From Mytilus californianus (lineage: Eukaryota): DNA of 64,000 nt. Where the stretch lies: NCBI RefSeq assembly GCF_021869535.1, contig NW_026262690.1, positions 92,380,001 through 92,444,000 of the forward strand, written 5' to 3'. A model generated the notes under the pieces. It worked only from the letters and a program-made list of their open reading frames with translations. It ran no database searches and was not told where the DNA came from. Below, piece after piece: positions 1 through 48,300 of this stretch. Position 1 is the stretch's first letter; each line of letters starts with the position of its first letter. The translations under genes and the position numbers were made by a program.

Positions 1-2281
1 GTATCATAATGGAGCCTGACTGATTGAATGAATAATTTATTGAAGACTAGGCCTTTTGGGAAAAATTTAAACTAAGAACAATATGGGCATATAAAAGTGC
101 TATCATGTGAAGAAGAATTGCTTAATAATCCTACCAACATTTAGGAATGAAGTGCCTCTGTTGTGCATCTGTAGGTATGCCATAAGATAAACAGAAGTTT
201 GAAAATTCATGTAATTTAATCTTGAAAATAAAACAGAAATTAAGAAAGTACTGATATACTATTACCTTGACCATCAGGTCCATAATTTAGACAACGGTCT
301 TTTTTGTTTGGATCAAAAAAACTTTATTGAGGCAGTATTCTTTTTGTGAACATGTAACATCTTTTAGAATGACATCAGTCTAAAGTATTATGCTGGAGGT
401 TATAATGCATTATTTGAAAACTCTTTAGAAAATAAAACTTTTTATCGAAAATTGAGAAATCCTATTTTTAATTAATTTTTTTAAACTGATTTTTTTGTCC
501 AATGTGAAGTGAATTTTTTATTCATTCTTATTAATTTTGGTTTATTTTGAGAATTTTAGAGATTTCAATTTGGACATCATTTATCACACTATACACATAA
601 ATAAGACTTGAAATCAATTTATTCTGTGTAGATAACTATTTAAATTCAAAGTCATGATTTTGAATATTGTTGGTTTTCCTATCACTTTGATTTGATACCA
701 AGTATTTTTATCATTAAATTGGATTAAAGCTTGTTTACTTGTACATTTTCACCAATATTCACTGATATTTACATTGTAGTAAAAGGGATTTATTTCATTT
801 ATTGAAATCTACAATAGCTTACAGAAATATAATTGATTGCATAATAAATCATTTTAAATCTGGTAAATTTTGTAAAGTCATTCTTTTAACAAATAATTTT
901 CTTTTTATATTTTATTCTTAATACAGGCTTTTCCTTGTTAATTTTTTTATGAAATTTACCTTGAAAATCTTCAAATATTGGCATTATTTGTATGTTTTGC
1001 AATAATACAATATTAAAAAAGTGCTATATAAAAAAATAGTTAAGGAAGCTAAATTTGAGGGGTAAGCAGCAGATAATTCTCAAAAGTAAAAAAATATGTT
1101 CCAGGTTTAAACATTTTTGTGTCTAAATAGTAGGAAAATACTTTCTATTAAAACTTGTTCTGCACAAAATTCTGGGAACAAAAATTTACATAATTACAAT
1201 GTAAGTCTAATGAAATACATTTATCTAAATATATCTACTTAAATGTAGTCTTGGTCTGTAAATGGATTATTGATTAATTTCTGTTCCTATGTATGATTTT
1301 AGCTTTTAATCGCAATCGCAATCGTAATCGGTCATTCAGATTTAAGAATGCATTAAGTTACATTACTTACATAGAGTTAAAATGGAGGTCAACTCTTATT
1401 AAGACATGAATAACAATAAGACCTATGCAATTAGCATTGACAGATTAATGTTTAGTCCCTTTATTTATCTTCAATTAAGTCAGCTATCCATGAGAAAATT
1501 ATTGCTTAACTTTCTATAGTTCAATTGCAAACTTGAATGAACATCTATAATTTAGATTGTTGCATGTGAATTTGTTTGTATTGAGGGGGTGTTGAAAATT
1601 ATATGATATAAAAGTTTGGAGAGTTAAGAACACTAGTCCAGTCATTCTAGCCAAAATATGACCAAACCTCAAACTAATTGCAACAGAATGTTCTTCTAGT
1701 TTTCCTAGCTGATTTTGGGTTACTGTTGAACATATGAAAAATCGAGAAAGTTTGGATGAAGGGAAATTGTTAATTTTGGGTGAAAACCTTGGATTTTGTT
1801 GAAAAATCGCTGAAAACTGGAAATTTGCCGTTATTAAAAAAGTAAAATAGCAACGTACATAATTTTTAATCAAGTCAATAGATCTTATTACAACAATGAA
1901 TTTTTGAAAATATGATGAACTTCAAAGTACAGGAAGTTGAAAATTTTGGGTGAAAATGTTGGATTTTTAGCAAAAAATCGATAAAAACTGGGAATTTATG
2001 TTTTCCTAAAAAAACCAAATTCAAATAAGATTATGAGTCTTCAAATTTACTTTGTATATGTTAAATATTGAGGGAGATCAAATAATGATAAATTCGTCAA
2101 GTCAATAGATCTTATAACAACAATAAAAACCGATTGACCGGTATGATACTTTTTCTTGAAACCAAAATAATTACGTTATAGGATAACAAAAACATGTAGT
2201 AGTTTTTACCCAAACCCCTTAACTATGCTAATTACGTTTTTTTTGTGTATTCTACATAGATCTTTTGAAGTTAATTGTCAC

Positions 2282-5200
2282 TTAATCGTCCATGTCAACT
2301 GTTTTGTTCGAATTTGTACAACCAGTTCCTTTACATTCGCCACATGCTACTGAACATTCAAGTCCGTTTTTTCTACAAGTACATCTTTTAGTGTCACAGT
2401 TTGTCTTACAATTGCATCGAAGAATGTTGAGTAATTTAGAGGGAGCTGCATCCATCGTACACTTAACTGGAACAAGGTTTCCATTAGCGACTTTCCAACC
2501 CCATTCACACGGATTTAAATTGTCCTTGTCCATCCACATTTCCATTTGAAGATAAGCCCTCTGGCTATGAAATGAAGCCGCATTTGATGTTGGCGGCAAA
2601 GTATGAATTTGAACGCACGTTTTGTTTGTCAATACTCTTGCAGCAAACTTTCTGTAGCGAAGAACGTTCAGTCCTTCATACGGAGCACCATTATATAGAG
2701 AGGAAATAATGTTTTCACCAGCAGAAATTACATCATCCTTTGTATTTGTATTGCATAATAACTGTGCCTGAGCCTTTACAAAGTCTTGTTCTCCGAATTT
2801 CTTTAGGGTCGCTGCTTTACTGACACCGAACATTCTTGAAGTTGTGTCACAACCACTGATAGCATGAATTAAAGGTAACAGTGTACATAGCTCCTCACCA
2901 AGAAGCGATTTGGTCTTCAAAATATCCCATATTTTAATATTTGTGTTGAGTTTTGACACATTGCCAGATTTGAATATCAGCGAATTTGATGTAACGTCCG
3001 CATGATAAAGAAGGAGTACCAGAAGATCAGTGTCCTCTCCTAGCAAAACAGTTGGTTTTGTTTTCGATGACTCGATTGCAGTAAGGGCTATCAATACATC
3101 AGCATCGGCATCTGAGTGTTTAGTTTCAATTCCCTTTTCTACCATCTTTGCACTCAAGAGATTAATGAAGTTTTGCTTGTTTTCGATGTTTGCTAGAAAT
3201 ATTTCTTTTTTAGATTTGAAAGGAGTTCTATCCGTGAATGAAACTTTTGTGCCTATGATTCCTTTGGTGCGTCGCTGGTGAGTGGCATCTTTAGTATCTG
3301 GACCCGAGGCATATCCATCAAATACAACTATAGCATTACTGTATTTCCGTTCTACGCTGTCAACGTACCTCTGGCAAATTTCACCGAAAGAAAGTCCGCT
3401 TTGCCAGTGTATACGATGGAGAAGAGAGCCGCCATCAATAATATACTGAGTTTTGTCGTTTTCGTTCATTTCAAATGCGCAACAATCGCCCTTTCCCCAA
3501 ATAGCATCTGCAAGACTAGACTTTTGTGCTGTTCGCATGAGCCCATTTGGATCAAACATTGAACTGGGATGACTACATAGTTCATAGGTGAATATTTCAG
3601 ACTGATCTTCATATATGCCATTTGATGCAGCAAGAAAGCGCTGAAAGAGAAGCTGTGAATCAACAGTAATGACATCATCATCAACTTTGATAGCCGATTT
3701 TGCACTTAAGATAATGGCCTGTTCTTTCCTTTTAAATGAAAATTCATCAATTTTCTGTCCGTCCATGGACTTTAGAATTTTAATCCCTAATTCCTTCGAA
3801 TTATCAACATTGACAAATTTGTCCGCCGAGACCCCTGTTTCTATATTTCGCAAACTGGTTTCCTCTACAAAAGGATTTCTGCTGATAAGAAACGATAAAA
3901 ATGTTTTCAAATCTTGACAGTCTCTCGATCTCCTTGAATCCCCACCTTCTTTATGTTGGTCACTTGTTCCATAATTGACTCCAGTAAACTCTTGCAAAGC
4001 ATTGTTCATTTCCGCGCAGTCTGGCATAGATAAAATCCATTGGGCTCGCTGACCCTCTGACATACCTCTGCCCCGAGTCATACCGCCTGTCGTCTTTAAG
4101 CTTCTCATTAAAACCTGTTCTATGACCAAATCAGAAGAAAGACCTGCCCAGAATTTATCACTCCTTCTTATAACATGATAACCTGATTGTAGAAAAGCTA
4201 ATACGTCAGGATGTGTTGTTTTCAAGTTCTGCATTTGTTGTAAGTATACTCGTGATGATTTGACATACAGATTGTGTCCCGAAGCTGCAAGATACGGAAG
4301 CATGTCTTTGACTGTTTGTAAATGTAGACCCCAGTTACCAGTCCTTTCAGCTTTGATGAATCTACGGAGTATATCTATCATATCCATATACTGGAACCAT
4401 AGTTGTGAAGTACGAAAACTTTTGTGTGACACCCGAAAGTTATCTATCCTAGATTTTATGTGATCTAATAAAACATTTTCGCAAGCTTTTTCGACGGATA
4501 TGTCCCCTTTCAGTAGTTCATCCAACATCGAATCTGCTTCATGCAACTCATCCGAAAGGTCCTCAGGGTTCATATCAGTAATGTCGGTATTTATGTAATT
4601 TGCCGGATTAATATCATTGGTTCCACTCTCATTTTCGATTTGATCTGGAAGTGGTATGCCGTATATGTGTGACAAGATTATTGACGTGAGAGCTGTGTCT
4701 ATCAGGAAATGTGCCCTTACTGCTCGTGCAATAGCCTTTCCACTAGTCATATGAGTTACTGCATTTGGTGCATACACTGTTTCAAGTAGCTCAGTAATTC
4801 CAGATCCTTCCATCAAGTGACCAATGCCGCCTACAAAACTCATTTCTAAATGAAAGCCTCCAAGTCTCAAGATAACTGACTTTAAAGGACTATCCAATGG
4901 TTCATCTTTAATTATGTTCATTGCCTTCCAATAGAGGGGTTGATCAAATGTCAAAATAGGTGAACAATGTTGAGCCTTTGCTTGCTTGCTTATGAAGTTA
5001 AGTGTTGAATTTATACATGTGAGATCACTAGGATTCATGTCTATCATTGGCAAAAAAACAACAGATGATTTTCCTGGATAATCACCGTCCATCACTTTGT
5101 GCATAATGGCTGACCAACTAGGTTGGTTGCATGTCAAAGGCCAGCATACTTTTGACAGAAGGTCTAACTTCCACGTTGTATCGACCATATTTGGCTCATA

Positions 5201-6700
5201 ATTCATGGTTGCGAACTCTGCCTGTAACGATTGTTTAGATTGCATCTTATAATAATCTATGTTAATCTTCGCTAAGTCAGAGACTTCCTTTAGTGTGGGA
5301 GACAGCCTAGGGACAGCTTTGTCAAGTCTAAATCCTGGAGTTACAGCTGCAATCATGCCCATACCATGAAATGTTCCATGACCATCTAAAGTGCGCAGGT
5401 TATGGTCTACGTTATCAGCTATATACTGAACGAAAGTGTCATTCCCAAACTGTGTGTCGGTTCTGTCATGAGCAGCAGCAGCAGCATTAAGTTCAAACCT
5501 TTGAACCTCTGTGTAAGAAGAAGCAAAACCAAGAGTGTTCAAAGTGTCCAACAAAAACCTTGATCCAAAGTGATGATGCATTTGTACACTGAGGGCAATT
5601 TGTAGCGGTGCAATAAGTGTTCTTGGTCGGGTTGCCTGAATTATAGCTTGACCAACAGATGCAACTTTAACAGTAGAGTCGTTTTGACTAAATAATGCAC
5701 TTAGAAATGTTCGTAACGAATCTGGGACAAAGGCAGTGTTTTGCTGTGAGTTTATATCAACAGAAGACGGATATATAGATTTTGAATCTTTAAGGCTCAT
5801 AATATCTGCTTTTATTAGCTTAGCTGCTGTTTCTATCATCGACAGCTTTTCATCTTCTGGACTCTTAGATGATGGTCTTCTGTAAAATTCGTTCAGTATA
5901 GATGATGCTGTTCTCCTAAATGTGACTATATTCGACTTTCCGTTTACTTCCGTGATGATGATATCGGATCCAAAATGAGTTTGCAGTCTCTTTTTCATGT
6001 GCACCACACTATACGCCTTCTCTCCGCAAATTTCTTCCATAGCCTGAACAAGATCGCTTACGGTTGCAGGTTCGTCTTGTGTTTCTTCTAATTGTCTAAC
6101 TATTTGCAGGAAAGCTTTCTCTGGTAAATCTTCTTTTGGTCGTCCTGGTGTCGTTCGTTTGACCTCTTTGTTTGCTTGCTTCGAAACGGGGATTTGCTTA
6201 CCAGTTCTAAAATTAACACTACATGTTTGGTGGTATATTGCATCTGCAGCGTGCAAATCGGATGGCGCAATGTTTAGCCTCCTCAAAACGTTTTCGGACC
6301 ATTCATCATTTCTTTCTTTGCAGATGTTTCTAAGGGTCTTAGAAAAATCTGTTGTCCTGACAGGAAACACGTCGATTCCCCTTTTGCTCTCCGAAAATTT
6401 TGCATAATTTCCACAAAATAAACAGTTCTTCTGGAACTCGAAAACAGGAGTGGAAGAGCGTAAGTCACGACTTAGCTCGGTTGTCGATAAATTCTTGTCT
6501 CGCAAGTCCTTCTTGATTGAATTAGCGTTTATGTAATCACGTCGACATTTCTGATGAACTTTTTGTCCTGGAGTTGTGTCGATCGTATCATTTCTGGTTT
6601 GGCTGGTCCTATTAACTGTGTTACATCCTTTTTCTCTTAGTTGTGTTATTTCTTCACCATTGTTTAGAGACACCCGACAGAAAACACAAGCATCCATCAT
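2282..6700 (-). CDS. Academ transposase (1472 aa): N-terminal Cys/His fingers, DDE-type core, XPG/FEN1 (PIN-fold) nuclease, C-terminal Cys8/CXC finger
   Basis: Uninterrupted ORF. Core motifs ADNVD, TFDQPLY, RLGGFHLE, SDLVIEQ. XPG/FEN1 acidic motifs IIDGG, VVFDGY, DADADV, GEDTDLLVLL, HAISGCDT. C-terminal CNCKTNCDTKRCTCRKNGLECSVACGECKGTGC. Confidence 0.9.
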   Translation of the reverse strand: MMDACVFCRVSLNNGEEITQLREKGCNTVNRTSQTRNDTIDTTPGQKVHQKCRRDYINANSIKKDLRDKNLSTTELSRDLRSSTPVFEFQKNCLFCGNYAKFSESKRGIDVFPVRTTDFSKTLRNICKERNDEWSENVLRRLNIAPSDLHAADAIYHQTCSVNFRTGKQIPVSKQANKEVKRTTPGRPKEDLPEKAFLQIVRQLEETQDEPATVSDLVQAMEEICGEKAYSVVHMKKRLQTHFGSDIIITEVNGKSNIVTFRRTASSILNEFYRRPSSKSPEDEKLSMIETAAKLIKADIMSLKDSKSIYPSSVDINSQQNTAFVPDSLRTFLSALFSQNDSTVKVASVGQAIIQATRPRTLIAPLQIALSVQMHHHFGSRFLLDTLNTLGFASSYTEVQRFELNAAAAAHDRTDTQFGNDTFVQYIADNVDHNLRTLDGHGTFHGMGMIAAVTPGFRLDKAVPRLSPTLKEVSDLAKINIDYYKMQSKQSLQAEFATMNYEPNMVDTTWKLDLLSKVCWPLTCNQPSWSAIMHKVMDGDYPGKSSVVFLPMIDMNPSDLTCINSTLNFISKQAKAQHCSPILTFDQPLYWKAMNIIKDEPLDSPLKSVILRLGGFHLEMSFVGGIGHLMEGSGITELLETVYAPNAVTHMTSGKAIARAVRAHFLIDTALTSIILSHIYGIPLPDQIENESGTNDINPANYINTDITDMNPEDLSDELHEADSMLDELLKGDISVEKACENVLLDHIKSRIDNFRVSHKSFRTSQLWFQYMDMIDILRRFIKAERTGNWGLHLQTVKDMLPYLAASGHNLYVKSSRVYLQQMQNLKTTHPDVLAFLQSGYHVIRRSDKFWAGLSSDLVIEQVLMRSLKTTGGMTRGRGMSEGQRAQWILSMPDCAEMNNALQEFTGVNYGTSDQHKEGGDSRRSRDCQDLKTFLSFLISRNPFVEETSLRNIETGVSADKFVNVDNSKELGIKILKSMDGQKIDEFSFKRKEQAIILSAKSAIKVDDDVITVDSQLLFQRFLAASNGIYEDQSEIFTYELCSHPSSMFDPNGLMRTAQKSSLADAIWGKGDCCAFEMNENDKTQYIIDGGSLLHRIHWQSGLSFGEICQRYVDSVERKYSNAIVVFDGYASGPDTKDATHQRRTKGIIGTKVSFTDRTPFKSKKEIFLANIENKQNFINLLSAKMVEKGIETKHSDADADVLIALTAIESSKTKPTVLLGEDTDLLVLLLYHADVTSNSLIFKSGNVSKLNTNIKIWDILKTKSLLGEELCTLLPLIHAISGCDTTSRMFGVSKAATLKKFGEQDFVKAQAQLLCNTNTKDDVISAGENIISSLYNGAPYEGLNVLRYRKFAARVLTNKTCVQIHTLPPTSNAASFHSQRAYLQMEMWMDKDNLNPCEWGWKVANGNLVPVKCTMDAAPSKLLNILRCNCKTNCDTKRCTCRKNGLECSVACGECKGTGCTNSNKTVDMDD

Positions 6701-6703
6701 TAC

Positions 6704-7660
6704 CTAAAAAAATGATAAAACTGTTAAGACGAGATTCAATTAATTTGGTTTTGCTTTCATATTATTTTATCAAAAGATTTGTTTTGGATACAATATTAAA
6801 AAAGATCTATGTTGACTTTTTTTATACTATAAAATAATTCATATGTAGTGTCTGTACTCATTTTGATTCAGGATTACAACAGTTATTTTTTTCATTTTGT
6901 TAATAGTTTCTATTTGTCGATATTCTGGTTTTATTTGTACTTTCCGCCGTAGTTCATTGTGTTTTTATTACTTTATCATGTTAACGCTTATACAGAAACA
7001 TATGACATTAATACAAGTATTAAGTGGCGCCCCTCCTCCTTTTCGGGTAAAATACCTGCTTGATGTATGCACAGAAAAACAACAGTAAAAAAAATTGCCC
7101 AAAAATGTAATATGAAGTTTGATAGAGTGCCTTTCCCCTGCTTGGTGCATGGTAGCTCAGTTAAATTGTATAATGGTAGCTTTGTTAAACTGGACAATTC
7201 TAATGTCCCTCTATCATTTGATTAATAAATATTCATCTTATTTTGGTAAAACAATTTGTCTGTATCGATTTTTAAATTTTATTATCAGTACAACTTCCTT
7301 TTTCCATGAATTCAATTTTGTTGGATTGTAACCTTTTTGGCACTAACGGCGTTCCATACTTTTTTTTTTCGTCAGCAACTCCTGGCAGTAGACTATAATT
7401 TCTTTTTTACGGGGCGATTTATATATGAAATGTATATAATTTAGTCCAAATATAAAAAGCAGAGCTGTTTTACACGTGATTTGTGGTTTAGACACCTCGG
7501 CAAACCGAAATGAACTCATTTCTGCCCTGTACTACTTTTTGCCGTCTCCCGTGTATTTACGCCTTTCAAAAACACCAAAAATACCTTGCATGACAGCTTT
7601 TACTCTTAAGAGTGCTAAATACATATAAAACTTTTATATATAAGTCTTATATTTACTTAC
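6704..7660 (-). other. Predicted 5'-UTR intron of the Academ transposase transcript
   Basis: Minus-strand donor CTG|GTAAGTAAAT at 7660; acceptor TTTTATCATTTTTTTAG| at 6704, three nt before the ATG. Confidence 0.6.
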
Positions 7661-8630
7661 CAGAATGAAAAGGATGGACACTAGATGCGTCGTCTGCAGT
7701 TGACCATTACGAGTTGTCTCCCATATCGTCATTCTCAATCTACGGGCGCCATATCTTTCCATAATATTTGAAGTAAAATCTTGATTTTTTTTTCGCCAAA
7801 ATTGACGACTTTCCCCTATTTCGATTTTTCTCGATTTTTAATATGTTTCTTATACGTTATATCTCTCACGAATTCCGCAAAAAACATTTCTGTTGCAATT
7901 AGTTTGAGGTATAACCATAGAATGACTGGACTACACGGTATATATTGTAGTTTGTTTGAACATAGAATATGATTCTTGGTATGAGAAAAAAAAAGGTGCG
8001 AGAAGATTGCCACAAATGTAAATTAAATTGATAATCATTAAGTCATAGCCTTAAAATAAAAAAAAAAAACATAGGATCATGTGTGAGATTGGTTTTTTTT
8101 TATTTAATTTTGATGGAGATGCAATCAGTAAATACAGCTATTGTAGAACCAATGAATGAAATAATTTTTTTTTTTTTTATCAGGATTCATAAAATGAAAG
8201 ATATTTGTGCCAGTGATATTTTACAACAAATGCACTCAGCTCTTATAGTCCAAGATTATTCTGACATCTGACATCCTTTCTTAGGAGTAGACTGACATTC
8301 GTCATTTTCACACAGTTATTGTTGAATATTTTAAGACATGCACATGTCAAATTTTGAATTAACAATTATAGAAATAAAATTTTGAAATTATCCATTCAAA
8401 CTAATCTTATATACAGATAAAAAAAAATGTAGTTGTCTGTATTTTTTTATATTCTAGTAACTCATTTTCTATGTTTATAAAACCACCTTCGAAATGAATA
8501 CATGCTTTTAAAAAACTCTTCGATTCTTGTATTGTGCTTTACAGAGCCCTTTGACAGTTACAGTTGATATTGATCCCTATGAGCGTTATTTTGTGGTCTC
8601 ATGTCAAACCTCATGATTAAGGCAAAATTA

Positions 8631-16200: not shown

Positions 16201-19200
16201 GAAATATTGATGCATTATTTGGACTTTTATTGGAGAGTTCTCCTGATTTACATAGGGTGAAATTGATTTGTACTGCAAAATTTTTTAAATGAAGAATGAT
16301 ACATATCCAATTGGAAGTAGACAACTGTTGACTTTGTCTACTATTTTGAGTGGACACAGACTCTTATATAGGGCTGATTGATTGGTGTTTAACGCGACTT
16401 TCAAAACTATTGTGCTATTTTGTGGCGGTCAGTTTTTATTGGTGGAGGAAGCCGGAGAGAACCACCGACCTTCGGTAGGAAAACGGACAATCCTAATCAA
16501 TTAAGATTGGAGTCGAGTGCACCTGCCTCGTGCAGAATTCAAACTCTCATACTCAGTGTTGACAGGATAGTGGTACAGTAGTTCAACTACTTAGACCACT
16601 CGGCCACAGAGGGCCCCAAAATATAGGGATGAAATATGGAGAAAGATATAAAACTATAGAAATGTTATATAGCTAGTGAGTAGTGACTCAACGATGGCTG
16701 AAGGAGAATTATTCAGTTTTCCAATAGTATTCAGTGATTTGTAAAGTTCTAGTGACCTATTAAAGAGATAATATATGGAGAAGCATATTACTATAGAAAG
16801 GTTATTTATTTAGTGACCTACTAACGGCAGTAGAAAGTAAAATAACAAAAATACCGAACTCCAAGGAAAACTCAAAACGGAAAGTCCCTTTTCAAATGGC
16901 AAAGTGTAAAGCTCAAACATATCAAATGAATGGAAAACAACTGTCATATTCCTGACTTGGTACAGGCATTTCCTGACTTGGTACAGGTATTTCCTGACTT
17001 GGTACAGGTATTTCCTTATGTAGAAAATGGTTGAGTAGGAGGATCATTGATTGTCAAGTAGTTTCATTGACAATTTCTTTGGGTTATTGCCTTATTGTGA
17101 TATTAGATATATAAATGTTGAGGTTAATACTCTTATTGTCCATATAAGGTAAATATGATTCATATATAAAACTTTAATTGCTGTATAGCTTTCAAGTTAT
17201 TTTCATCAAAATATAAAAAAAAAATTTCCAAGAAAATTAGTGCATCAAATTTTCCATTGAGATTTAACATTTTGATCTGTACATTTTTCCTTATTTCCAT
17301 TCTCTTTTCTATTTTAACTTCCTCTGAGCATAATTAGATTATAAGTAGGTTTTTTTTCCAGGGAAAATTATCTTTTTTGTTAAAACAATACACTATGCAA
17401 TAAAAGGATACATTTTAATTTATTTTTTGGCCTTCAACAAAACTGAAATTGTCGACATGAGGCTGTAAATGGAAGATGATATAACACTTGCATATTTCAA
17501 ATATGACATCCACTGATTTACAGGCTCCTGAATTTTGACAGGCAGATAAAGAATGAGTTAACATGGATGGTTAATAAATTCACAGGCTCTTTTAACAACA
17601 TCCCAATAAAAATTAGGATTTGATATCGCATTTTAATAAGAATTCTACAGATACAGCCAAACTTTCAAACCAAGTCTTTGTATCTAAGAAAATATTGCTT
17701 GCTTATTTAAGATCTGACTGACAGCTAGCCTAACGAGTACTACATTTGTAGTACTATGCAAGTTTCACAGTCATGTAATGCTAACATGTTATTGCCCTGT
17801 TAAGTAATTCATTTGTCTAATATTTATTTGTCTTTAAATAGTAGCATGAAACATATTTTAAGATATTATGAATTTCTCTTCTTATGAACTACTTTCTAAT
17901 TTGAACCTTTGTTGCCTAGATGATTTTTATTTAAAGCTTTCAAATGCCATCTCATTGATGTCTACCCATATTTCTCCTTTTGTTTTTATCAGAGTATGAT
18001 TAAAATAAAAAAAGCTTTATGTTAGATTTACTTGATCAATATTGATAACTTTTCAAAAGGAGGTGCTCTGCATAATTCTGCTTTAAACAAGGATGATGCA
18101 GCCTGTACCAATTTTTAAAAGTCCTGAGAGTCATAAAAGCGTACTGAATTTTCAAGAACACAGTTGTTGTTTTGGGGTGTCTGAGCACTCACAAACTTAT
18201 AACATTGTATCATTCTTTCATTTTTATGTAAAGAACCTGCAGTTCAGTGGATTTTCTCTTCATGTCTTAAATTGATTTTGATGTGGTTTTCTTAAATTTC
18301 AGCAGGTTTTTTTTTTTTTTTTTTTGTAAGTTATACACGTATACTTTTTATATACTATGTATATAGTACCATCAATTGTTTGTTTTGAATTATACTACTA
18401 ATTTGTGTATTGTTTGGGCTAATTAGGGCTTGCCATGAATGGCTTGCATTCATTGTTGAAAACCATACTTTTTCATTCAAGTGTTAGTATACTGGCAATC
18501 ACACTCTATTACCAAATATTTGTATGGATATCAAATGAGTATAATTTTCCTTTGTTGACTTCCAAATTATTCTTCAGACTTCCCTTATTTTTCTTTAAAT
18601 CAGTAATAAAAAACGAAACTGTTCACAAATAATTCTCTTGTATTATTCTGCATGCATGATTACTGTTTTCTTAGTTTCATTTGTTTCACTAACTTCAGAT
18701 CTTAAATAATTAGATTCCAGGATATTCCAACTCATATAGTTTGGCCTTTGCAGTGTCTGGACAACCTTTGTCACTTACACATCCTATATAGATAGTTCTT
18801 GTTGTAGATAGAGCAAGGGAGTATGGATATATGATCCCCATGTCTTGGAGGGTATAGTAGGTAATAATTTGTCCTTGGTCAGTCAGTATATGCAATAAAT
18901 GATTATCCATATCTGTAACAATGATATTATCTGATGGTAGTGTTAGTATTCCACGAGGTGTAAACGGATCGTTATCAGTGTTGATTTCAGGGAGACCCTT
19001 GTAAATCCCTAGAATGTCTCCTCCTTGTGATAAGACTACCACTCGACCTCTGTAATCATCATCTAATCTGTCCACCACAAAGATATTACCCTTACTAGTG
19101 CTGGTAATACATCTAGGATAGGTGAATAAATTTTTGTTTTTGGTTAGAAATTTAGGCAACGTAACTGATCGTTTGTTATGTTTTTCATGTTCATATTCCT

Positions 19201-22200
19201 CTAGTTGTTTTCCTTCCTGATCGAGTACGATAACTGCACGACTTCCTATGGCAGGGAATAACATTCCTGAAGATTTGGCTCCTATGATAACTCTGTGATC
19301 GCTGGTCACATGGATACTGATGGGATACAATGGTTTTACATCATACACGGAATCTGTTATCTGTCCTGTTATGGTGTTGATTAGTTTGAGTTTAGTCTCA
19401 TCATGTGTTGTAACAAGAATGTTATTTGAATGAGTTTTTGCCATTCCATCTGTCTTAAAGTTTAAACTTCTTATAACTTCAGTACTATTCCCCCTAAGTG
19501 TGACATGTTGTAACTTGAATTTGGAATTATCGCCTATCCACATAGAACCATTAGAAAGTACTACTATATTTGTAAGATAAGTTGTATCTGATGTAAATTC
19601 TTCAGATATCTCAAACACAATCTTACTCTGCTGTTTTGGCGTTATTTCTACCTTGCCTTTATTATAGTCTTCCTCTTCTTTTAACTCATGTCCATTATGA
19701 ACTTTAACACTGCACTTAAAACAGATAAGTGTATTACAAGTTGTACAGTAAAGACAACAAGCCTGGTCAAAATGTACTTCACACTGGACATCACTGAATC
19801 TGAATGTTTCCTTCGACCTTTCCTGCTTTCCTATACCTGTAATGTCCAGTATCCTATGATCATTAGCAATCCTTGAATGGACCGTGCTCTTACATTTGTC
19901 TTTGCCTTTTTTAAAGTCTTCTTCGTCAATTAACTCATGTCCATTATGAACTTTAACGCTGCACTTAAAACAGATAAGTATATTACAAGTTGTACAGTAA
20001 AGACAACAAACCTGGTCAAAATGTACTTCACACTGGACATCACTGAATCTGAATGTTTCCTTCGACCCTTCCTGCTTTCCTATACCTGTAATGTCCAGTA
20101 TCCTATGATCATTAGTAATCCTTGAATGGACCGTGCCCTTACATTTTTCTTTGCCCTTATTAAAGTCTTCTTCCTCAATTAACTCATGTCCATTATGAAC
20201 TTTAGCGCTGCACTTAAAACAGATAAGTGTATTACAAGTTGTACAGTAAAGACAACAATCCTGGTCAGAATGTATTTCACACTGGACATCACTGAATGTG
20301 AATGTTTCATTTGACCCTTCATGTTTTCCTATATTATTAATGTTCAGTATTTTATGATCAATAGCAATCCTTAAATGGATTGTGGCCTTACATTTCTCAC
20401 ATATTAGTAAGTCACATTGTAAGCATTTCCATTTTATCTTTTTCCCACTTTCACATAACTGACATCCAATTGGAATCTGACTTTTTTGTAGTGAGGTTGT
20501 GAACGCCATTTCTATATTTGAAGATGTCTGACTTTATACTTCCTTTTCTGTTTGCCTCTCATCATGTGATTTTATACTTCCCTTTTAGCTTGAAAAGGAA
20601 GTATTAAGTCAGATGAAAATTTAATATCTATTTGAATTTTTCCTTTTCTACATTTACATCTACCGGTACATCTTTAAATTGCAAACTTTCCAGGGTCTTA
20701 CGCCCACCATATTTAGCATGTAATAATTACTCCAGAAACAATTTAAATTTGATCTGCATTCATTTATATGTTATGAATAAGCACCATATTGTATGACTGA
20801 CTTAGGACTTATGTGATGAGGCTGTTTTTGAATGCCTCTGCATCATATTTATTTAAGAGTTTTGTTGGTAAACTGTTCCAGTTCTTGGTGGTATGTGTAC
20901 GAGGAAAGCTGCTTTTGTTAGTGTAAGCAGATGATTAGAGCTCAATTAGAAGTCTCAAGGAGGTCTTTCAGATAAATTTAGTGTTGCATTTAATATTTTT
21001 ATAACAGCTTCTTTTTAAATTTGAATTGAAAAATTATTTAGTGAATGATAATAATGTATAGTGATAAGTATGAATGTAAAGAGATGTTGGTTACCTAAAA
21101 AAGAATACAAATCATTTAGAGACCGCAGAATTTAGATAGAAGACTGACAGATGACTTTTTAGCTCACCTGGGCTTTTAAGTTGATGTGAGCTATTGCCAT
21201 CACTTAGTGTCCCTCGTCATAGTCCTGTCCATCATCTTAAACTTTATAAAAAAAACTTCTCCTCTTAAACTACAAGACAAAACTTGGGTGAATGATCCTT
21301 AGGGTATCTAGTATAAGTTTATTTGTTTTTTTATTCATGTCCATCAAGAAACATGGCCATGGTGGCTAAAAATAGAACAGACAGGAATACATTAATTGTC
21401 TTATATCTTCAAAACTAAATTAACTAGAGAAATTGCTCACAATGTCAACTTCTACTTAGTTCTATTTCAATCAAAATTATCAGATGACTCCTTAAAGAGT
21501 TATTGCAATAACATGACCATTTTTTTGCTAGTTTTCATGTTTTTGCCTATTTACTCTAGAAGTATAATACATAGTTTATCTCAAGAACTATAAAATCATC
21601 AGCAATACATGTTATACAAAAAACAAGAATGTGCCCATAGTACACTGATGCCCCATTCGCACGATCAATTTCTATGTTCAGTAGACCGTGAAATTGGGGT
21701 TCAAACTCTAATTTGGCATTAAAATTAGAAAGATCATATCATAGGGAACATGTGTACTAAGTTTTAAGTTGATTGGACTTCAACTTCATCAAGAACTACC
21801 TTGACCAAAAACCTTAACCTGAAGCGAGACAGACAGACAAACAAACGGACGAACGAACGAATGAACGAACAGACGCACAGACCGAAAAACATAATGCCCC
21901 TCTACTATCCTAGGTGGGGCATAAAAAGCAAAATGACTAAAACCATTGGATGTGCCCTTCAAACAATTTTTGAATAACTTTTATAGTTTTGTAATTATCT
22001 TGAAAGCATTAATAGATAGATAGAAACTGTTAATAGCAAAAATGATCAGCTGTACAAGAGTACAAAAAAGCCAAATGGCTGAAACAATTTGGTGACTGAT
22101 TAAGAAGTTATTATCCTAGTATCAAGATTTTTGATTAATTTTTGTGTTTTTGTATAAAAAAATAGGTACAAACTGTGCACAGCAAAAATGATCAGCAATC

Positions 22201-45300: not shown

Positions 45301-48300
45301 TGCATGAAACCTTAACATGGAGATAAGTAAAAAGATTGTATCCAACCTTACACAAGCAAAAAAAGCTCTCAGTGATAGATTCATGACTTGCTTTTATCGA
45401 TATATGATGTATATGTCTTTGAAGGAACATGCTTGGGAAAAGTTATTTATTGATTCCAATATTTCTAGTTTGAAGACAGATAACTGGTCGATGTGTTTTT
45501 GGATTCGTGGCATTATACTTTGCACACATCAAGTTAAATATGCATTTCATTTAATATTATCAAATTCTAATTGTTTGTTACCATGACATCCTTCTGCACT
45601 GTTTTAGAATTTTTAAGCTCAGTGTAAACTTGACACTTTTATATTTATTTTAAATATTCTTAATGGTTAAATTTGAAGAAATATATATAACTTCCCTTAA
45701 ATGGTAAATCAATTCATTTTTAGAATAAAAGTTCAAATTACTTAACACTGTATTGAAAGCCATATGGTGACTAATAGATGCTAACATCCTTGTCATTTGG
45801 ACTCTGGTGGATAGTTGTCTTATAAGCATGCATACCGCATCTCCTTATTTATATATTGCTAACTAAGGTAATATTTCTTCTGTTTGTTGAAATTATATAA
45901 TTGAAGAAAATTTATTATTCTTGATGTTTTATTTTTTTTCAAAGAATGCTGTGAAGGATAAAGAAAAGCATGACATATCATTGACTGCATATAAAAAGCA
46001 CCTAAAAGACCTTGAAGATTGGGTTGAAGAAATGAAAATCAGACAAGCTGCCACACCCCTACCTACAGACAGTGTTCAGTCTCTTCGTCAATATCTCCAT
46101 GACAACCAAACATTGCAGGAAGAATTGAACAATCGTCTTCAGGTGGTGTCAGATCTTGCGGTGCAATGTGATGCTTTATGTGAGAGGGAAACACCCGCAA
46201 AGGCCGACAAATTACGATCTCAGTTGACAAACCTTCAAACACAGCTTGGAAATCTGAAACTAGCTGCCATAGAAAAACAAGGCCCAATTAGGGCTGCTAT
46301 CAAAGAAAGTGAAAAACGGCATAAAGAAATGGATGATTATGAAAAGAAAGTTAAGAAGTTGCAAGACTGGGTAGTTGACACTAAACAATTAGCCATGGTA
46401 CCTCCCAAAATAGAAACCCTCATATTACCAGAAAATCGCCAGAGTCTTCAACAGGTATGCTGATTAAGTCCCCAAAATTTTTTTTTGTCTTGTTGGAAAC
46501 ATCATTTTGGTGATTTTCTTAAATTGTTTATTGTCCTATCAGATTTGATATTCGTTTTTTATTGCAAATTAGAGATTGTTAAATAAATGATAAGTAAAAT
46601 TGATTTCACTGTTTATAACTTCCATTTCAATGAATGGTATATTGACATTTTGGTCTTCATCTTTTTATGCCACCTCCGTAAGCGACTGCGGCAGTGTTAC
46701 CCTTGATCATCCATCTTTCTGTCCGTCTGTCCATCCTATTTTCTTTGCAAAGCATTCGTGTCCTCAGACACATTCTTCTTTTAATTTTTAAACAGTTTTT
46801 ATAAATAATAATACAAGTGTACAATAATATAGTCTTAAGAGTTTTAGATTTGCTTTATTAATGCAAATAAGACATGAGTAGAGATGCTTTTGATTTTATA
46901 TTTCTTGATACACTTTGTAATTCAAATACACTTTACCTTATTAACATTTAGTACTGCAGTAATGATATACAATTTACATTTTTTGTAGCAACTTAGATCA
47001 GATTTATCAGAACATCGACAACTTGTGCAACAACTTTCTACTGATGCCCCATCATATCAAAGTAGGGGACCAGAATTGCCAATAGCACCACCTATAAGTG
47101 AAGAGGAACTGGTCCACAGGTGGCAAGAACTTAATGATGAGCTTAACCAGAAAAAAGAACAGTTAGAAGACCTTTTGAGAGGCAGGGGACATCTGGTAAT
47201 TTATGCTTAATAATATTATGTAGAAATGAAGTCAGAATTGTAGATTATTTGTGTATCTTAAAGTACAAAATATTATAATATTATAGATGATATAACTATC
47301 CTTGGTAAAGTGTATCTTGAAGTACAAAATAACAGGATGTCATAAATAATATAACTATCCTGGAAGACTTGATGAACTTCATTATTACATGAAATGCTCA
47401 ATTTAAAGAAACAAATTTGTAAATGGCCTATTCATCTGGCTAATCTCTCCATTACAATCTTTAAAGTCCTTATTTCTGTTTTCATTCAAGCATGAAAAAT
47501 TTGGTTTTTATTAATTTGCAAATTTTGTCTGTAGGAGCCTAGAAGTAGTTATAGTTGGTTGTCACCATCAGACCCTCAAGGTCAACTGAATGACATTAGA
47601 CATAATCTTGATGAACTCAATAACCTTTGGCAGCAGCTCAATACTCAGGTGGAAGACAAACAGTTGAGATTGGACCAAGCATTGGATTATCAACAAAAGT
47701 ACCAGGATGCATTGCAAAATATCTCACAATGGCTGGATCTGGCTGAGCAGAAGATACTGTCTCCTGATAGTGATAAAGACTCTCAGCAGAAACTTAGAGA
47801 AAACGAGGTTATATATTGTTCTTGACCAAACTTAAGATATAAGGATTTTCAACACCTGGAACCTACTAAAATGATGTGCTTTTTTCCAAAATTTTGCTTA
47901 CATTGTAAACAAAGCAAATTTCAAAAGAGATAATAAACCTTGCATAAGATGATTTCAGTCTTTCAAACCAAAGTACACAGGATATTTTGTATTCAAGTTC
48001 TAAGTACCTATGACTTCCCTTTTTTATTCTTAATTGTCCTTTTTCTTTAACACACACTATATCTACAATCTACATATATAATTTATATACTTAATTTTAA
48101 AGTATACAATATTGTGTGTATATTATAAAAAAGAAGATGTGGTATGATTGCCAATGAGACAACTCTCCACAAGAGACCAAATGACACAGAGATTAGTTTG
48201 TCATCATGAATTAATTTGTAAATGCTTGTTGTGTACAATCTTTTTTTTTTTGTTTTGTTTTCAGGCCTTACAAAGAGACATTAAATCCCTTCAAAATGAA

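What the first reader, a model, noticed from the sequence alone, without database searches (positions are those of the whole stretch)
1634..7933. Apparently intact, recently inserted AcademX transposon: transposase fused to an XPG/FEN1 nuclease
Seen in sequence: both termini, a perfect CAC TSD, and a 4.4-kb ORF with no stops that keeps the acidic motifs of both the putative DDE core and the XPG/FEN1 domain, plus all eight C-terminal cysteines. Established: this architecture defines Academ. Inference: this is a candidate active autonomous copy. Why a cut-and-paste transposase carries its own flap/gap endonuclease is, to my knowledge, unresolved (hairpin opening, flap trimming or gap repair are possibilities). 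A complete element with defined ends is the substrate needed to reconstitute the system.
Basis: partly seen in the sequence, partly recalled or inferred. Interest (0 to 1): 0.7.

Follow-up and report, generated by a model that had tools for sequence, protein, structure and literature searches.

The report
Intact young AcademX transposon copy
This is a complete, evolutionarily young copy of a known kind of cut-and-paste jumping gene (AcademX) in a mussel-like genome, whose single protein joins a transposase to an EXO1/FEN1-like DNA nuclease; the insertion is absent from other individuals' chromosomes, so it is recent, but elements of this kind are common in bivalves.

Summary
Window 1634-7933 is a 6,300-bp DNA transposon with perfect 16-bp terminal inverted repeats, a CAC target-site duplication and one uninterrupted 1,472-aa ORF (2282-6700, minus strand).

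- **Copies:** about ten full-length copies are 97.8-99.75% identical to each other. Eleven have matching 3-bp duplications at different sites. Only two, this one included, keep the open frame.
- **Recent insertion:** contigs of two independent DNA studies carry the exact empty site, so the insertion is not fixed.
- **Nuclease:** single-sequence Pfam finds nothing. A 42-homologue profile hits human EXO1 (E 3e-4) with six catalytic carboxylates aligned. An AlphaFold model (pLDDT 90.5) matches EXO1/FEN1/XPG at Z 14-16.7.
- **Transposase:** the core model is an RNase H-like DDE transposase, nearest the P element transposase (Z 11.2).
- **C-terminus:** a tail with nine invariant cysteines, CXC-like.

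These features fit AcademX as described in the literature. Direct comparison with Repbase references was not possible.

Current activity is unproven: RNA reads are very few and at least one pair comes from another copy. Why the nuclease is there remains inference. I favour cleavage of the non-transferred 5' strand.

This is a new member of a known, bivalve-rich superfamily, of moderate interest.

The parts
1631..1633 (.). Left copy of the 3-bp target-site duplication (CAC)
   Evidence: The empty-site contigs in runs X1 and X5 carry a single CAC joining 1600-1633 directly to 7937 onward.
1634..7933 (-). Complete 6,300-bp AcademX-type DNA transposon (gene on the minus strand)
   Evidence: Own-genome DNA search finds about 10 full-length copies with exactly these ends. 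This copy differs from the majority of copies at 15 of 6,299 sites.
1634..1649 (+). Left terminal inverted repeat, perfect 16 nt (TAGTCCAGTCATTCTA)
   Evidence: pair I9. There are 37 exact occurrences genome-wide.
1650..1790 (.). Left subterminal region with blocks complementary to the right end; candidate transposase-binding sites
   Evidence: a 23-nt perfect block (ACCTCAAACTAATTGCAACAGAA) and an AACATAT..AAAAATCGAGAAA block. pairs I1 and I2. Binding is inferred, not tested.
2282..6700 (-). Single-exon ORF of 1,472 aa plus stop: N-terminal Cys/His region, DDE transposase core, XPG/FEN1-like nuclease, CXC-like tail
   Evidence: More than 140 homologues of similar length in molluscs, corals, Nematostella and a rotifer.
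6101..6700 (-). N-terminal region (aa 1-200) with two CxxC...HxxC motifs (C5/C8/H49/C52 and C93/C96/H157/C160); presumed zinc-binding DNA-recognition module
   Evidence: These residues are invariant or at least 90% conserved. No Pfam family and only unnamed Atlas clusters. The function is inferred.
3701..5713 (-). Transposase core (aa 330-1000): RNase H-like fold with a roughly 270-aa all-helical insertion. Candidate catalytic residues are D429/D432 (5405-5416), D586 (4943-4945) and E861 (4118-4120).
   Evidence: AlphaFold2 pLDDT 85. VIA Z 11.2 to P element transposase 6pe2, 7.7 Transib, 7.6 Hermes, 6.3 RAG1. Residues invariant in 42 homologues. DUF6589 hits in 13 of 42 homologue cores.
2510..3526 (-). 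XPG/Rad2/FEN1-superfamily 5' nuclease domain (aa 1059-1397) with carboxylates D1089, D1128, D1199, D1201, D1223, D1225, D1285 and gateway K1137/R1143
   Evidence: Family profile against PDB hits human EXO1 at E 3.4e-4, aligning with D78, E150, D152, D171, D173, D225 and R92. AlphaFold2 pLDDT 90.5. Foldseek probability 1.00 to FEN1, EXO1, Rad2 and XPG. VIA Z 16.7 EXO1, 16.3 FEN1, 14.6 XPG, 12.9 GEN1.
2312..2416 (-). C-terminal cysteine cluster (aa 1429-1463, nine invariant Cys), CXC / tesmin-TSO1-like
   Evidence: Sources name homologues 'Tesmin/TSO1-like CXC domain-containing'. Only sub-threshold Pfam hits to preSET_CXC and TCR and no PDB sequence hit.
6701..7933 (-). 1.2-kb 5' non-coding part (promoter and 5' UTR presumed) including the right subterminal blocks
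   Evidence: No ORF of 100 aa or more. Homologues start at the same Met. A few RNA reads fall at 6800-7199 and 7800-7999.
7918..7933 (-). Right terminal inverted repeat, perfect 16 nt
   Evidence: pair I9.
7934..7936 (.). Right copy of the 3-bp target-site duplication (CAC)

Best explanation
This is a structurally complete, evolutionarily young autonomous DNA transposon of the AcademX type, present at this locus on some chromosomes of the species and absent from others.

Its one protein has four parts:
- An N-terminal Cys/His region, presumed to recognise the transposon ends.
- An RNase H-like DDE transposase core (D429/D432, D586, E861) interrupted by a large helical insertion. It is structurally nearest the P element transposase.
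- A complete EXO1/FEN1-like 5' nuclease domain with all seven carboxylates.
- A nine-cysteine CXC-like tail.

Shown here: the anatomy, the 3-bp staggered integration, the multi-copy young family, neutral decay of most copies, the insertion polymorphism, and the folds with their conserved active sites.

Inferred mechanism:
- The DDE site nicks the 3' ends of the element and joins them to target DNA cut with a 3-bp stagger.
- The fused structure-specific nuclease cuts the other, non-transferred 5' strand at the branched or single-strand/duplex junction at each end, before or just after strand transfer. This frees the element from donor flanking DNA.
- This is a two-nuclease division of labour like TnsB/TnsA of Tn7, or flap removal after Mu integration.

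My odds are about 0.9 for the identity and youth of the element, about 0.45 for this role of the nuclease, and about 0.5 that the family is still mobile today.
For: - Ends, duplication and ORF.
- Copy set: about 10 full-length copies at 97.8-99.75% pairwise identity, and 11 of 11 matching 3-bp duplications at different sites.
- Open frames: only the window copy and L009 keep the 1,473-codon frame.
- Decay: changes in the other copies have a nonsynonymous:synonymous ratio of about 1.4-4 plus stops and frameshifts, as expected for neutral decay.
- This copy: its 5 private amino-acid changes miss the strongly conserved columns (at most 78% conserved).
- Polymorphism: empty-site contigs in X1 (study P1) and X5 (study P2) join 1600-1633 directly to 7937 onward with a single CAC.
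- Nuclease: EXO1 profile hit with catalytic residues aligned; model pLDDT 90.5; Z 16.7 over 258 residues covering EXO1 residues 2-312.
- Core: Z 11.2 to P element transposase, and the top 24 rows are all DDE transposases or recombinases.
- Selection: both active sites are invariant or at least 90% conserved across homologues from molluscs, cnidarians and a rotifer, so both are selected in the family.
- Literature: AcademX makes 3-4-bp duplications and carries a nuclease (PMC10045372). Academ is abundant in bivalves and averages 5.6 kb (PMC10294476).
Against: - No reference Academ sequence (Repbase, Dfam, Yuan and Wessler profiles) could be compared, so the family name rests on architecture, duplication length and indirect DUF6589 hits.
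- Single-sequence Pfam and PDB searches are blank.
- Expression is barely detectable (10 read mates in about 10.3 million records). One read pair carries non-window letters at 6931 and 6957, so this copy's transcription is unproven.
- No de novo insertion or excision event was observed.
- The best nuclease matches, EXO1 and FEN1, normally need a free 5' end to thread. A 5' strand still joined to chromosomal flanking DNA does not offer one, which weakens the second-strand-cleavage idea.
- The P element transposase, the nearest fold, cuts both strands with its DDE site alone.
Confidence: 0.8

Rival explanations
1. Same element, but the nuclease does not cleave transposon ends. It works on repair instead. 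One version: it trims short 5' flaps while the 3-nt gaps beside the new insertion are filled. Another version: it resects the double-strand break left at the donor site, EXO1-style, so the break is repaired by homologous recombination from the sister or homologue. That would restore the element and give a net copy gain.
For: - The closest structural relatives are EXO1 and FEN1 (Z 16.7 and 16.3), enzymes of resection and flap trimming that need free 5' ends, rather than XPG or GEN1.
- The gateway Lys/Arg and all carboxylates are kept.
- The sister lineage AcademH carries an SF2 helicase instead (PMC10045372, PMC10799480). From general knowledge, host long-range resection uses either EXO1 or a RecQ helicase with DNA2, so the two accessory enzymes parallel the two resection routes.
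- The nearest transposase fold, the P element, needs no second nuclease.
Against: - Host cells already supply FEN1 and EXO1, so it is unclear why an element would carry its own.
- Covalent fusion to the transposase, in every one of 42 homologues, argues for action inside the transpososome at the ends.
- The literature links the nuclease/helicase difference to duplication length, an integration-step property (PMC10045372).
- There are no data here on donor-site repair products.
Confidence: 0.3
2. The copy is intact only because it is young. The family is no longer mobile, for example because it is silenced or carries family-wide disabling changes, and this copy is a dead-on-arrival or already inactive relic rather than an autonomous source element.
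For: - Eight of ten full-length copies are already broken.
- RNA is nearly absent in the one raw-read RNA run examined.
- The protein departs from the homologues' residue at 28 of 426 columns that are at least 80% conserved, for example F837L, L623V and F1315L.
- The copy has 15 private substitutions, so it is not brand new.
Against: - The deviations are conservative, and no invariant catalytic or cysteine column is affected.
- Two copies keep a 4.4-kb frame, which is unlikely to persist long under neutral decay.
- The insertion is still polymorphic.
- Pairwise distances go down to 0.25%.
- The tissue and library of the RNA run are not known to be germline.
Confidence: 0.45
3. The ORF is a host gene derived from a transposase (domestication) rather than a mobile element.
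For: A long intact ORF with strongly conserved domains; homologues are annotated as ordinary proteins in several genomes.
Against: - The locus has inverted repeats and a target-site duplication and is absent from other haplotypes.
- About 10 near-identical copies lie at unrelated loci, each with its own duplication.
- The copies decay neutrally.
- There are hundreds of related cores in the genome.
Confidence: 0.02

Closest known systems
AcademX lineage of the Academ superfamily (Kapitonov and Jurka 2010, Repbase Reports; Kojima 2020, Mobile DNA 11:15; summarised in PMC10045372)
   Same: A DNA transposon bounded by terminal inverted repeats, with a 3-bp target-site duplication, a large DDE-type transposase with a nuclease in the same element, a length of about 6 kb, and bivalve hosts (PMC10294476 reports 100 curated bivalve Academ consensus sequences, mean 5,565 bp).
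   Different: Nothing found that departs from the description. This particular family (16-bp terminus TAGTCCAGTCATTCTA; best database protein only 52% identical) could not be matched to a named Repbase or Dfam entry. I could not check whether the CXC-like tail and the P-element-like fold of the core are already described, because the primary papers are not held.
AcademH lineage (Academ with helicase)
   Same: According to the literature it shares the Academ transposase core. Some homologue cores hit Pfam DUF6589, which the one relevant held paper mentions in a rust fungus.
   Different: AcademH carries an SF2 helicase instead of the nuclease and makes 9-10-bp duplications (PMC10045372). Here there is no helicase and the duplication is 3 bp.
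Drosophila P element transposase (PDB 6pe2/6p5a)
   Same: The best structural match to the core: Z 11.2, 361-367 residues aligned, an RNase H-like fold split by a large insertion domain.
   Different: About 11% identity. The P element makes 8-bp duplications, has a THAP domain and a GTP-binding insertion, and has no fused nuclease (general knowledge). No THAP hit was found here.
Human EXO1 / FEN1 / XPG (Rad2-XPG 5' nuclease superfamily)
   Same: The same fold over the whole catalytic domain (Z 16.7, 16.3 and 14.6). Six carboxylates plus the gateway arginine align by sequence profile.
   Different: Only 13-14% identity. Here the domain is embedded in a transposase polypeptide and followed by a CXC-like zinc cluster instead of the PCNA- or MMR-interaction tails. 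Substrate is unknown.
Tn7 TnsB (DDE) + TnsA (endonuclease), and flap removal after phage Mu integration
   Same: Functional analogy only: a DDE enzyme handles 3' ends and a second nuclease activity handles the 5' strand or flanking flaps (general knowledge).
   Different: The proteins are unrelated. TnsA has a restriction-enzyme fold and is a separate polypeptide. The analogy is untested for Academ.

Membership tests
AcademX (Academ superfamily) | DNA element bounded by terminal inverted repeats that makes 3- or 4-bp target-site duplications (PMC10045372) | tested here: met
   16-bp perfect inverted repeats. 11 of 11 copies have matching 3-bp duplications. The empty site has a single CAC.
AcademX (Academ superfamily) | Encodes a DDE/RNase H-like transposase | tested here: met
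   AlphaFold2 model at pLDDT 85. All top structural matches are DDE transposases, Z 11.2 to the P element. D429/D432, D586 and E861 are invariant. Catalysis itself is not tested.
AcademX (Academ superfamily) | Carries an XPG-type nuclease (a nuclease per PMC10045372; XPG type from my knowledge of Kapitonov and Jurka 2010 and Kojima 2020) | tested here: met
   Profile hit to EXO1 at E 3.4e-4. Foldseek probability 1.00. Z 16.7, 16.3 and 14.6 to EXO1, FEN1 and XPG.
AcademX (Academ superfamily) | No helicase (which would define AcademH) | tested here: met
   No helicase Pfam hit in the whole protein. The parts with an assigned fold (core, nuclease, CXC-like tail) are not helicases, and the N-terminal region has no Pfam family.
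AcademX (Academ superfamily) | Significant sequence similarity of the core to reference Academ transposases (Repbase, Dfam, Yuan and Wessler alignment) | not testable with these tools
   No Repbase or Dfam library is available. Kojima 2020 and Yuan and Wessler 2011 are not held. The supplement that should hold the curated bivalve library contains SINEs in the part read. Indirect evidence only: DUF6589 hits in 13 of 42 homologue cores.
Rad2/XPG/FEN1 5' nuclease superfamily | PIN-like alpha/beta core with helical gateway and H2TH region, spanning the whole catalytic domain | tested here: met
   Model residues 35-373 align to EXO1 residues 2-312: 258 residues, rmsd 3.9, Z 16.7.
Rad2/XPG/FEN1 5' nuclease superfamily | Seven active-site carboxylates and the gateway basic residues | tested here: met
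   D1128, D1199, D1201, D1223, D1225 and D1285 align with EXO1 D78, E150, D152, D171, D173 and D225. R1143 aligns with R92, and K1137 is adjacent to K85. D1089 is invariant at the end of the first strand, but its equivalence to EXO1 D30 is inferred.
P element superfamily (considered) | 8-bp duplication, THAP DNA-binding domain | tested here: not met
   The duplication is 3 bp and there is no THAP or other Pfam hit in the N-terminus. Only the core fold resembles it.
hAT superfamily (considered) | 8-bp duplication, hAT C-terminal dimerisation domain | tested here: not met
   3-bp duplication, no Pfam hAT domain, and Hermes matches only at Z 7.6.
Tesmin/TSO1-like CXC (CRC) domain | Nine-cysteine CXC pattern recognised by the family profile | tested here: inconclusive
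   Nine invariant Cys, and sources name the homologues as CXC-containing. However, Pfam TCR and preSET_CXC hits are sub-threshold (best E 0.0098-0.015 in 3-4 of 42 members) and there is no PDB sequence hit.

The most novel reading that the evidence does not exclude
The two alternative accessory enzymes of Academ elements are an EXO1-like nuclease in AcademX (shown here) and an SF2 helicase in AcademH. They mirror the cell's two long-range end-resection routes: EXO1, or a RecQ helicase with DNA2. On this reading the element carries its own resection factor. That factor would channel the double-strand break left by excision into homologous recombination, so the donor copy is restored and cut-and-paste becomes effectively replicative. 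A polymorphic copy with an open frame and defined ends, like this one, would let that be tested.
Probability: 0.12. Interest if true: 0.8.

Novelty: new member of a known kind. Interest (0 to 1): 0.4.

Why it matters
To my knowledge, no Academ transposase has been studied biochemically or structurally, and the reason these elements carry a flap or gap endonuclease is unknown. A copy with exact ends (confirmed by an empty-site allele), an open frame, and both active sites intact is a suitable starting point for ordinary excision, integration and cleavage assays.

The structural results add concrete hypotheses:
- The core is closest to the P element transposase.
- The nuclease is closest to EXO1 and FEN1 rather than XPG proper.
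- A CXC-like zinc tail follows the nuclease.

Against this, Academ elements are already catalogued in large numbers in bivalves, and this genome alone holds several other families with open frames. The finding is therefore a good specimen rather than a discovery.

Tried and rejected
- **Single-sequence searches:** Pfam on the whole protein and PDB phmmer on the C-terminal 472 aa gave nothing. Family profiles and structure prediction were needed.
- **Primary papers:** Kojima 2020 and Yuan and Wessler 2011 are not held. No held paper contains both 'Academ' and 'XPG'.
- **Bivalve TE library:** the supplement labelled as the class II library (PMC10294476, file 14) contains SINE sequences in the part read (part 1 of 2), so no reference Academ DNA could be compared.
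- **N-terminal region:** no Pfam family; the Atlas gives only unnamed clusters.
- **Cysteine tail:** a profile search against PDB gave no hit.
- **Core against the ESM Atlas by shape:** only unnamed eukaryotic clusters, one with DUF6589.
- **Helicase-bearing Academ element:** I tried to locate the one noted earlier in this genome (s1-330668), to test whether its core is related. The region I derived from the stated offset (L031, L032) has no similarity, so the coordinates were probably misread. Abandoned.
- **Further polymorphic insertions from contig flanks in other runs:** the X1 flank lies next to a reference copy at C110:42297416, so it is not polymorphic evidence. The X7 flank (another species label) is absent from this genome.
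- **Both junctions in one read-laying run:** not possible, because the element is 6,300 bp and the limit is 6,000. The right junction plus the ORF was laid.
- **Large representative protein search:** left unused, because the family scans did not leave the protein open.
- **Domestication:** considered and rejected (see rivals).

Full report
**What is in the sequence**

Window 1634-7933 is bounded by a perfect 16-nt inverted repeat, TAGTCCAGTCATTCTA at 1634-1649 and its complement at 7918-7933. Aligning the left end with the reverse complement of the right end shows further conserved blocks over about 150 bp, including a perfect 23-nt block. Mean identity is 76% over 281 columns.

The three bases outside each end are CAC (1631-1633 and 7934-7936). 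They form a direct repeat, not an extension of the inverted repeat.

Inside lies one ORF, 2282-6700 on the minus strand, 1,472 aa, with a stop two codons upstream of the first ATG. Homologues begin at the same methionine, so the gene is a single exon. It has 1.2 kb of non-coding sequence upstream and 0.65 kb downstream. The coding part is 38-42% G+C against 22-30% in the flanks.

**Copies in the same genome**

The window is G000:C110:92380001-92444000 of a 1.65-Gb assembly in 175 contigs.

- The element finds ten copies that span or nearly span its length, at 98-100% identity by the search. Older pieces are 81-96% identical, and there are more distant relatives at 65-71%.
- The exact 16-nt terminus occurs 37 times. 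A one-mismatch variant, TAGTCCAGTCAATCTA, is also frequent and points to a sister family.
- Eleven copies with both ends recovered all have matching 3-bp duplications of different sequence: CAC, AAT, TAG, TTA, ATA, AGA, TAA, TAT, TTA, CGA, TAT. They lie at unrelated loci with no strict target consensus.
- Pairwise substitution distances among the ten copies are 0.25-2.2%. The window copy differs from the majority letter at 15 of 6,299 sites, or 0.24%.
- Only the window copy and L009 (C110:31.48 Mb) keep the 1,473-codon frame. L009 also has a 98-bp insertion in the upstream non-coding part. The other eight have stops, frameshifts or deletions.
- Changes in those copies are nonsynonymous:synonymous at about 1.4-4:1, as expected for neutral decay after insertion.
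- The window copy's eight private coding changes comprise three synonymous and five nonsynonymous (A712P, Q747H, A1318T, K1387E, I1427L). None lies in a strongly conserved column (at most 78% conserved).

**The insertion is not fixed**

I laid contigs from three DNA runs and raw reads from one RNA run on window 2200-8199.

- **Run X1 (study P1).** A contig aligns from 7933 rightwards, and its preceding 30 letters are exactly window 1600-1629. Because 1630-1633 (ACAC) equals 7933-7936, the contig reads left flank, one CAC, right flank. This is the precise empty site.
- **Run X5 (study P2).** The same junction appears with two nearby single-base differences (at 1606 and 7937), so it is an independent allele.

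This confirms the element's boundaries and the 3-bp duplication, and it shows a presence/absence polymorphism. The empty alleles have no footprint, so they look like never-occupied sites rather than excisions.

None of the contigs in X1, X5 or X7 carries the window copy's private letters. Contigs drop minority variants, however, so this does not show absence.

Depth over the element is roughly 10-15 times that of low-depth neighbouring contigs, in line with the reference copy number.

A run under another species label (X7, organism B) holds 80% of the sampled words. It has its own flank, which is not found in this genome.

**Expression**

In the one raw-read RNA run (X22), 10 read mates laid out of about 10.3 million records read, scattered over the element. 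The two mates covering 6931 and 6957 carry the letters of other copies. The family is transcribed at a very low level in that sample. Transcription of this copy is not shown.

**What the protein is**

Single-sequence Pfam and PDB searches are blank. The word-index protein search returns more than 140 relatives of similar length. They come from Mytilus, Mercenaria, Patella, Mya, Pinctada, Porites, Nematostella and the rotifer Seison. The best full-length hit is 52% identical. A chimeric Mytilus edulis model matches at 86% over a third of the query, which fits an earlier agent's description of a mussel-like genome.

An alignment of 42 homologues (A1) shows four conserved modules.

- **N-terminal region.** Two CxxC...HxxC motifs (C5/C8/H49/C52 and C93/C96/H157/C160). 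No family could be assigned. I take it as the likely end-recognition module; this is inference.
- **Transposase core (aa 330-1000).** AlphaFold2 with the alignment gives pLDDT 85.
  - The model has the beta1-beta2-beta3-alpha-beta4-alpha-beta5 order of an RNase H-like domain. The invariant DNVDHN (D429, D432) sits on the first strand, TFDQP (D586) just after the fourth strand, and IEQ (E861) on a helix beyond a roughly 270-residue all-helical insertion.
  - Foldseek alone is weak (best E 0.028, Hermes). Re-alignment gives Z 11.2 to the Drosophila P element transposase (361-367 residues), 7.7 to Transib, 7.6 to Hermes, 6.9 to ISCth4 and 6.3 to RAG1. All top 24 rows are DDE transposases or recombinases.
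  - Thirteen of 42 homologue cores hit Pfam DUF6589, best E 6.7e-7. The one relevant held paper mentions this family in a rust fungus, and rust fungi are among the fungi richest in Academ elements (PMC5751038). This is only a lead.
- **Nuclease (aa 1059-1397).**
  - The family profile hits human EXO1 at E 3.4e-4. D1128, D1199, D1201, D1223, D1225 and D1285 align on EXO1 D78, E150, D152, D171, D173 and D225. R1143 aligns on R92, and K1137 sits beside K85.
  - The AlphaFold2 model of aa 1025-1472 has pLDDT 90.5.
  - Foldseek's top 50 are all FEN1-superfamily or related XRN 5' nucleases, at probability 1.00.
  - Re-alignment gives Z 16.7 to EXO1 (258 residues, rmsd 3.9, covering EXO1 2-312), 16.3 to FEN1, 14.6 to XPG and 12.9 to GEN1.
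  - D1089 is invariant at the end of the first strand, where the seventh carboxylate is expected; this equivalence is inferred.
  - Two of 42 members reach sub-threshold Pfam XPG_I hits.
- **Cysteine tail.** Nine invariant cysteines (aa 1429-1461). Sources name several homologues 'Tesmin/TSO1-like CXC domain-containing'. Pfam hits are sub-threshold and a PDB profile search is blank. A Zn3Cys9 CXC cluster is likely but not established.

**Comparison with what is known**

The literature held here says that Academ has two lineages: AcademX, with 3-4-bp duplications and a nuclease, and AcademH, with 9-10-bp duplications and a helicase (PMC10045372, citing Kojima 2020). It also says that Academ is especially abundant in bivalves, with 100 curated full-length consensus sequences and a mean length of 5,565 bp (PMC10294476).

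That the nuclease is of the XPG type is my recollection of Kapitonov and Jurka 2010 and Kojima 2020, which I could not read.

Every architectural feature tested fits AcademX. The one test I could not run is direct comparison with reference Academ sequences.

This genome holds many more cores of this type: 824 first-look candidates, with several other families keeping open frames of 1,395-1,472 aa. Earlier notes of this scan also report Academ-like elements here.

**How it probably works**

Shown: integration with a 3-bp stagger, and two separately conserved nuclease active sites in one polypeptide across phyla.

Inferred:
- The DDE site nicks the 3' ends and performs strand transfer.
- The FEN1/EXO1-like domain cuts the non-transferred 5' strand at the branched or single-strand/duplex junction at each end, before or just after strand transfer.
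- This is comparable in logic to TnsA with TnsB in Tn7, or to flap removal after Mu integration (general knowledge).

I put this at about 0.45. Two points weigh against it. EXO1 and FEN1 normally thread a free 5' end. And the nearest transposase fold, the P element, cuts both strands by itself.

The main rival, at about 0.3, is a repair role: trimming flaps during gap filling, or resecting the donor break to favour homologous restoration. The resection idea gains some appeal because the sister lineage carries a helicase, which parallels the cell's two resection routes. Catalytic-mutant assays would separate these readings.

**Verdict**

- Present-day activity and the nuclease's role remain untested.
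- This is a new member of a known and, in bivalves, common kind. It is useful as a defined substrate for the first mechanistic work on Academ and is otherwise ordinary.

A majority letter was used inside a script only to count differences.

Noticed in passing
window 18710-20509 (-): Intronless 599-aa ORF with B-box zinc fingers (E 1e-18) and an NHL repeat: a TRIM-NHL-like gene about 11 kb from the transposon.
   Followed up: partly
window 45921-46463 and 58732-59295 (+): Two ORFs with spectrin repeats, probably exons of one large spectrin-repeat gene.
   Followed up: partly
G000 genome-wide: A one-mismatch variant of the terminus, TAGTCCAGTCAATCTA, makes up about half of the one-mismatch places listed. 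It points to a sister family or non-autonomous derivatives sharing nearly the same ends.
   Followed up: no
G000:C154:28144815-28162009 (L014-L016, L018, L020, L021): Three head-to-tail partial copies of the element (query 1-2949 followed by 2945-4489/4943) with a period of about 5.56 kb, 95-96% identical to the query. This is a tandemly duplicated, internally rearranged derivative.
   Followed up: no
L009 = G000:C110:31478684-31485080: The only other copy with the full open frame. It differs from the window copy by 11 amino acids and carries a 98-bp insertion, which looks like a tandem duplication of query 5752-5850, in the upstream non-coding part.
   Followed up: partly
G000, e.g. C99:787789-789741, C13:23190669-23192636, C132:23994251-23996203: Other families of the same transposase-nuclease type with open frames of 1,395-1,472 aa. 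The core profile gave 824 first-look candidates in this genome.
   Followed up: no
L019 = G000:C121:106983990-106988909: An older copy (about 91% identical) in which the terminal repeat with its flank occurs twice, 125 bp apart. This is a local duplication across the element boundary.
   Followed up: no
runs X7 (organism B), X10-X14 (organisms C, D): DNA runs under other species labels hold 38-80% of the element's sampled 31-letter words. Near-identical copies therefore exist in related species. Whether this reflects shared ancestry, introgression or horizontal transfer was not examined.
   Followed up: no
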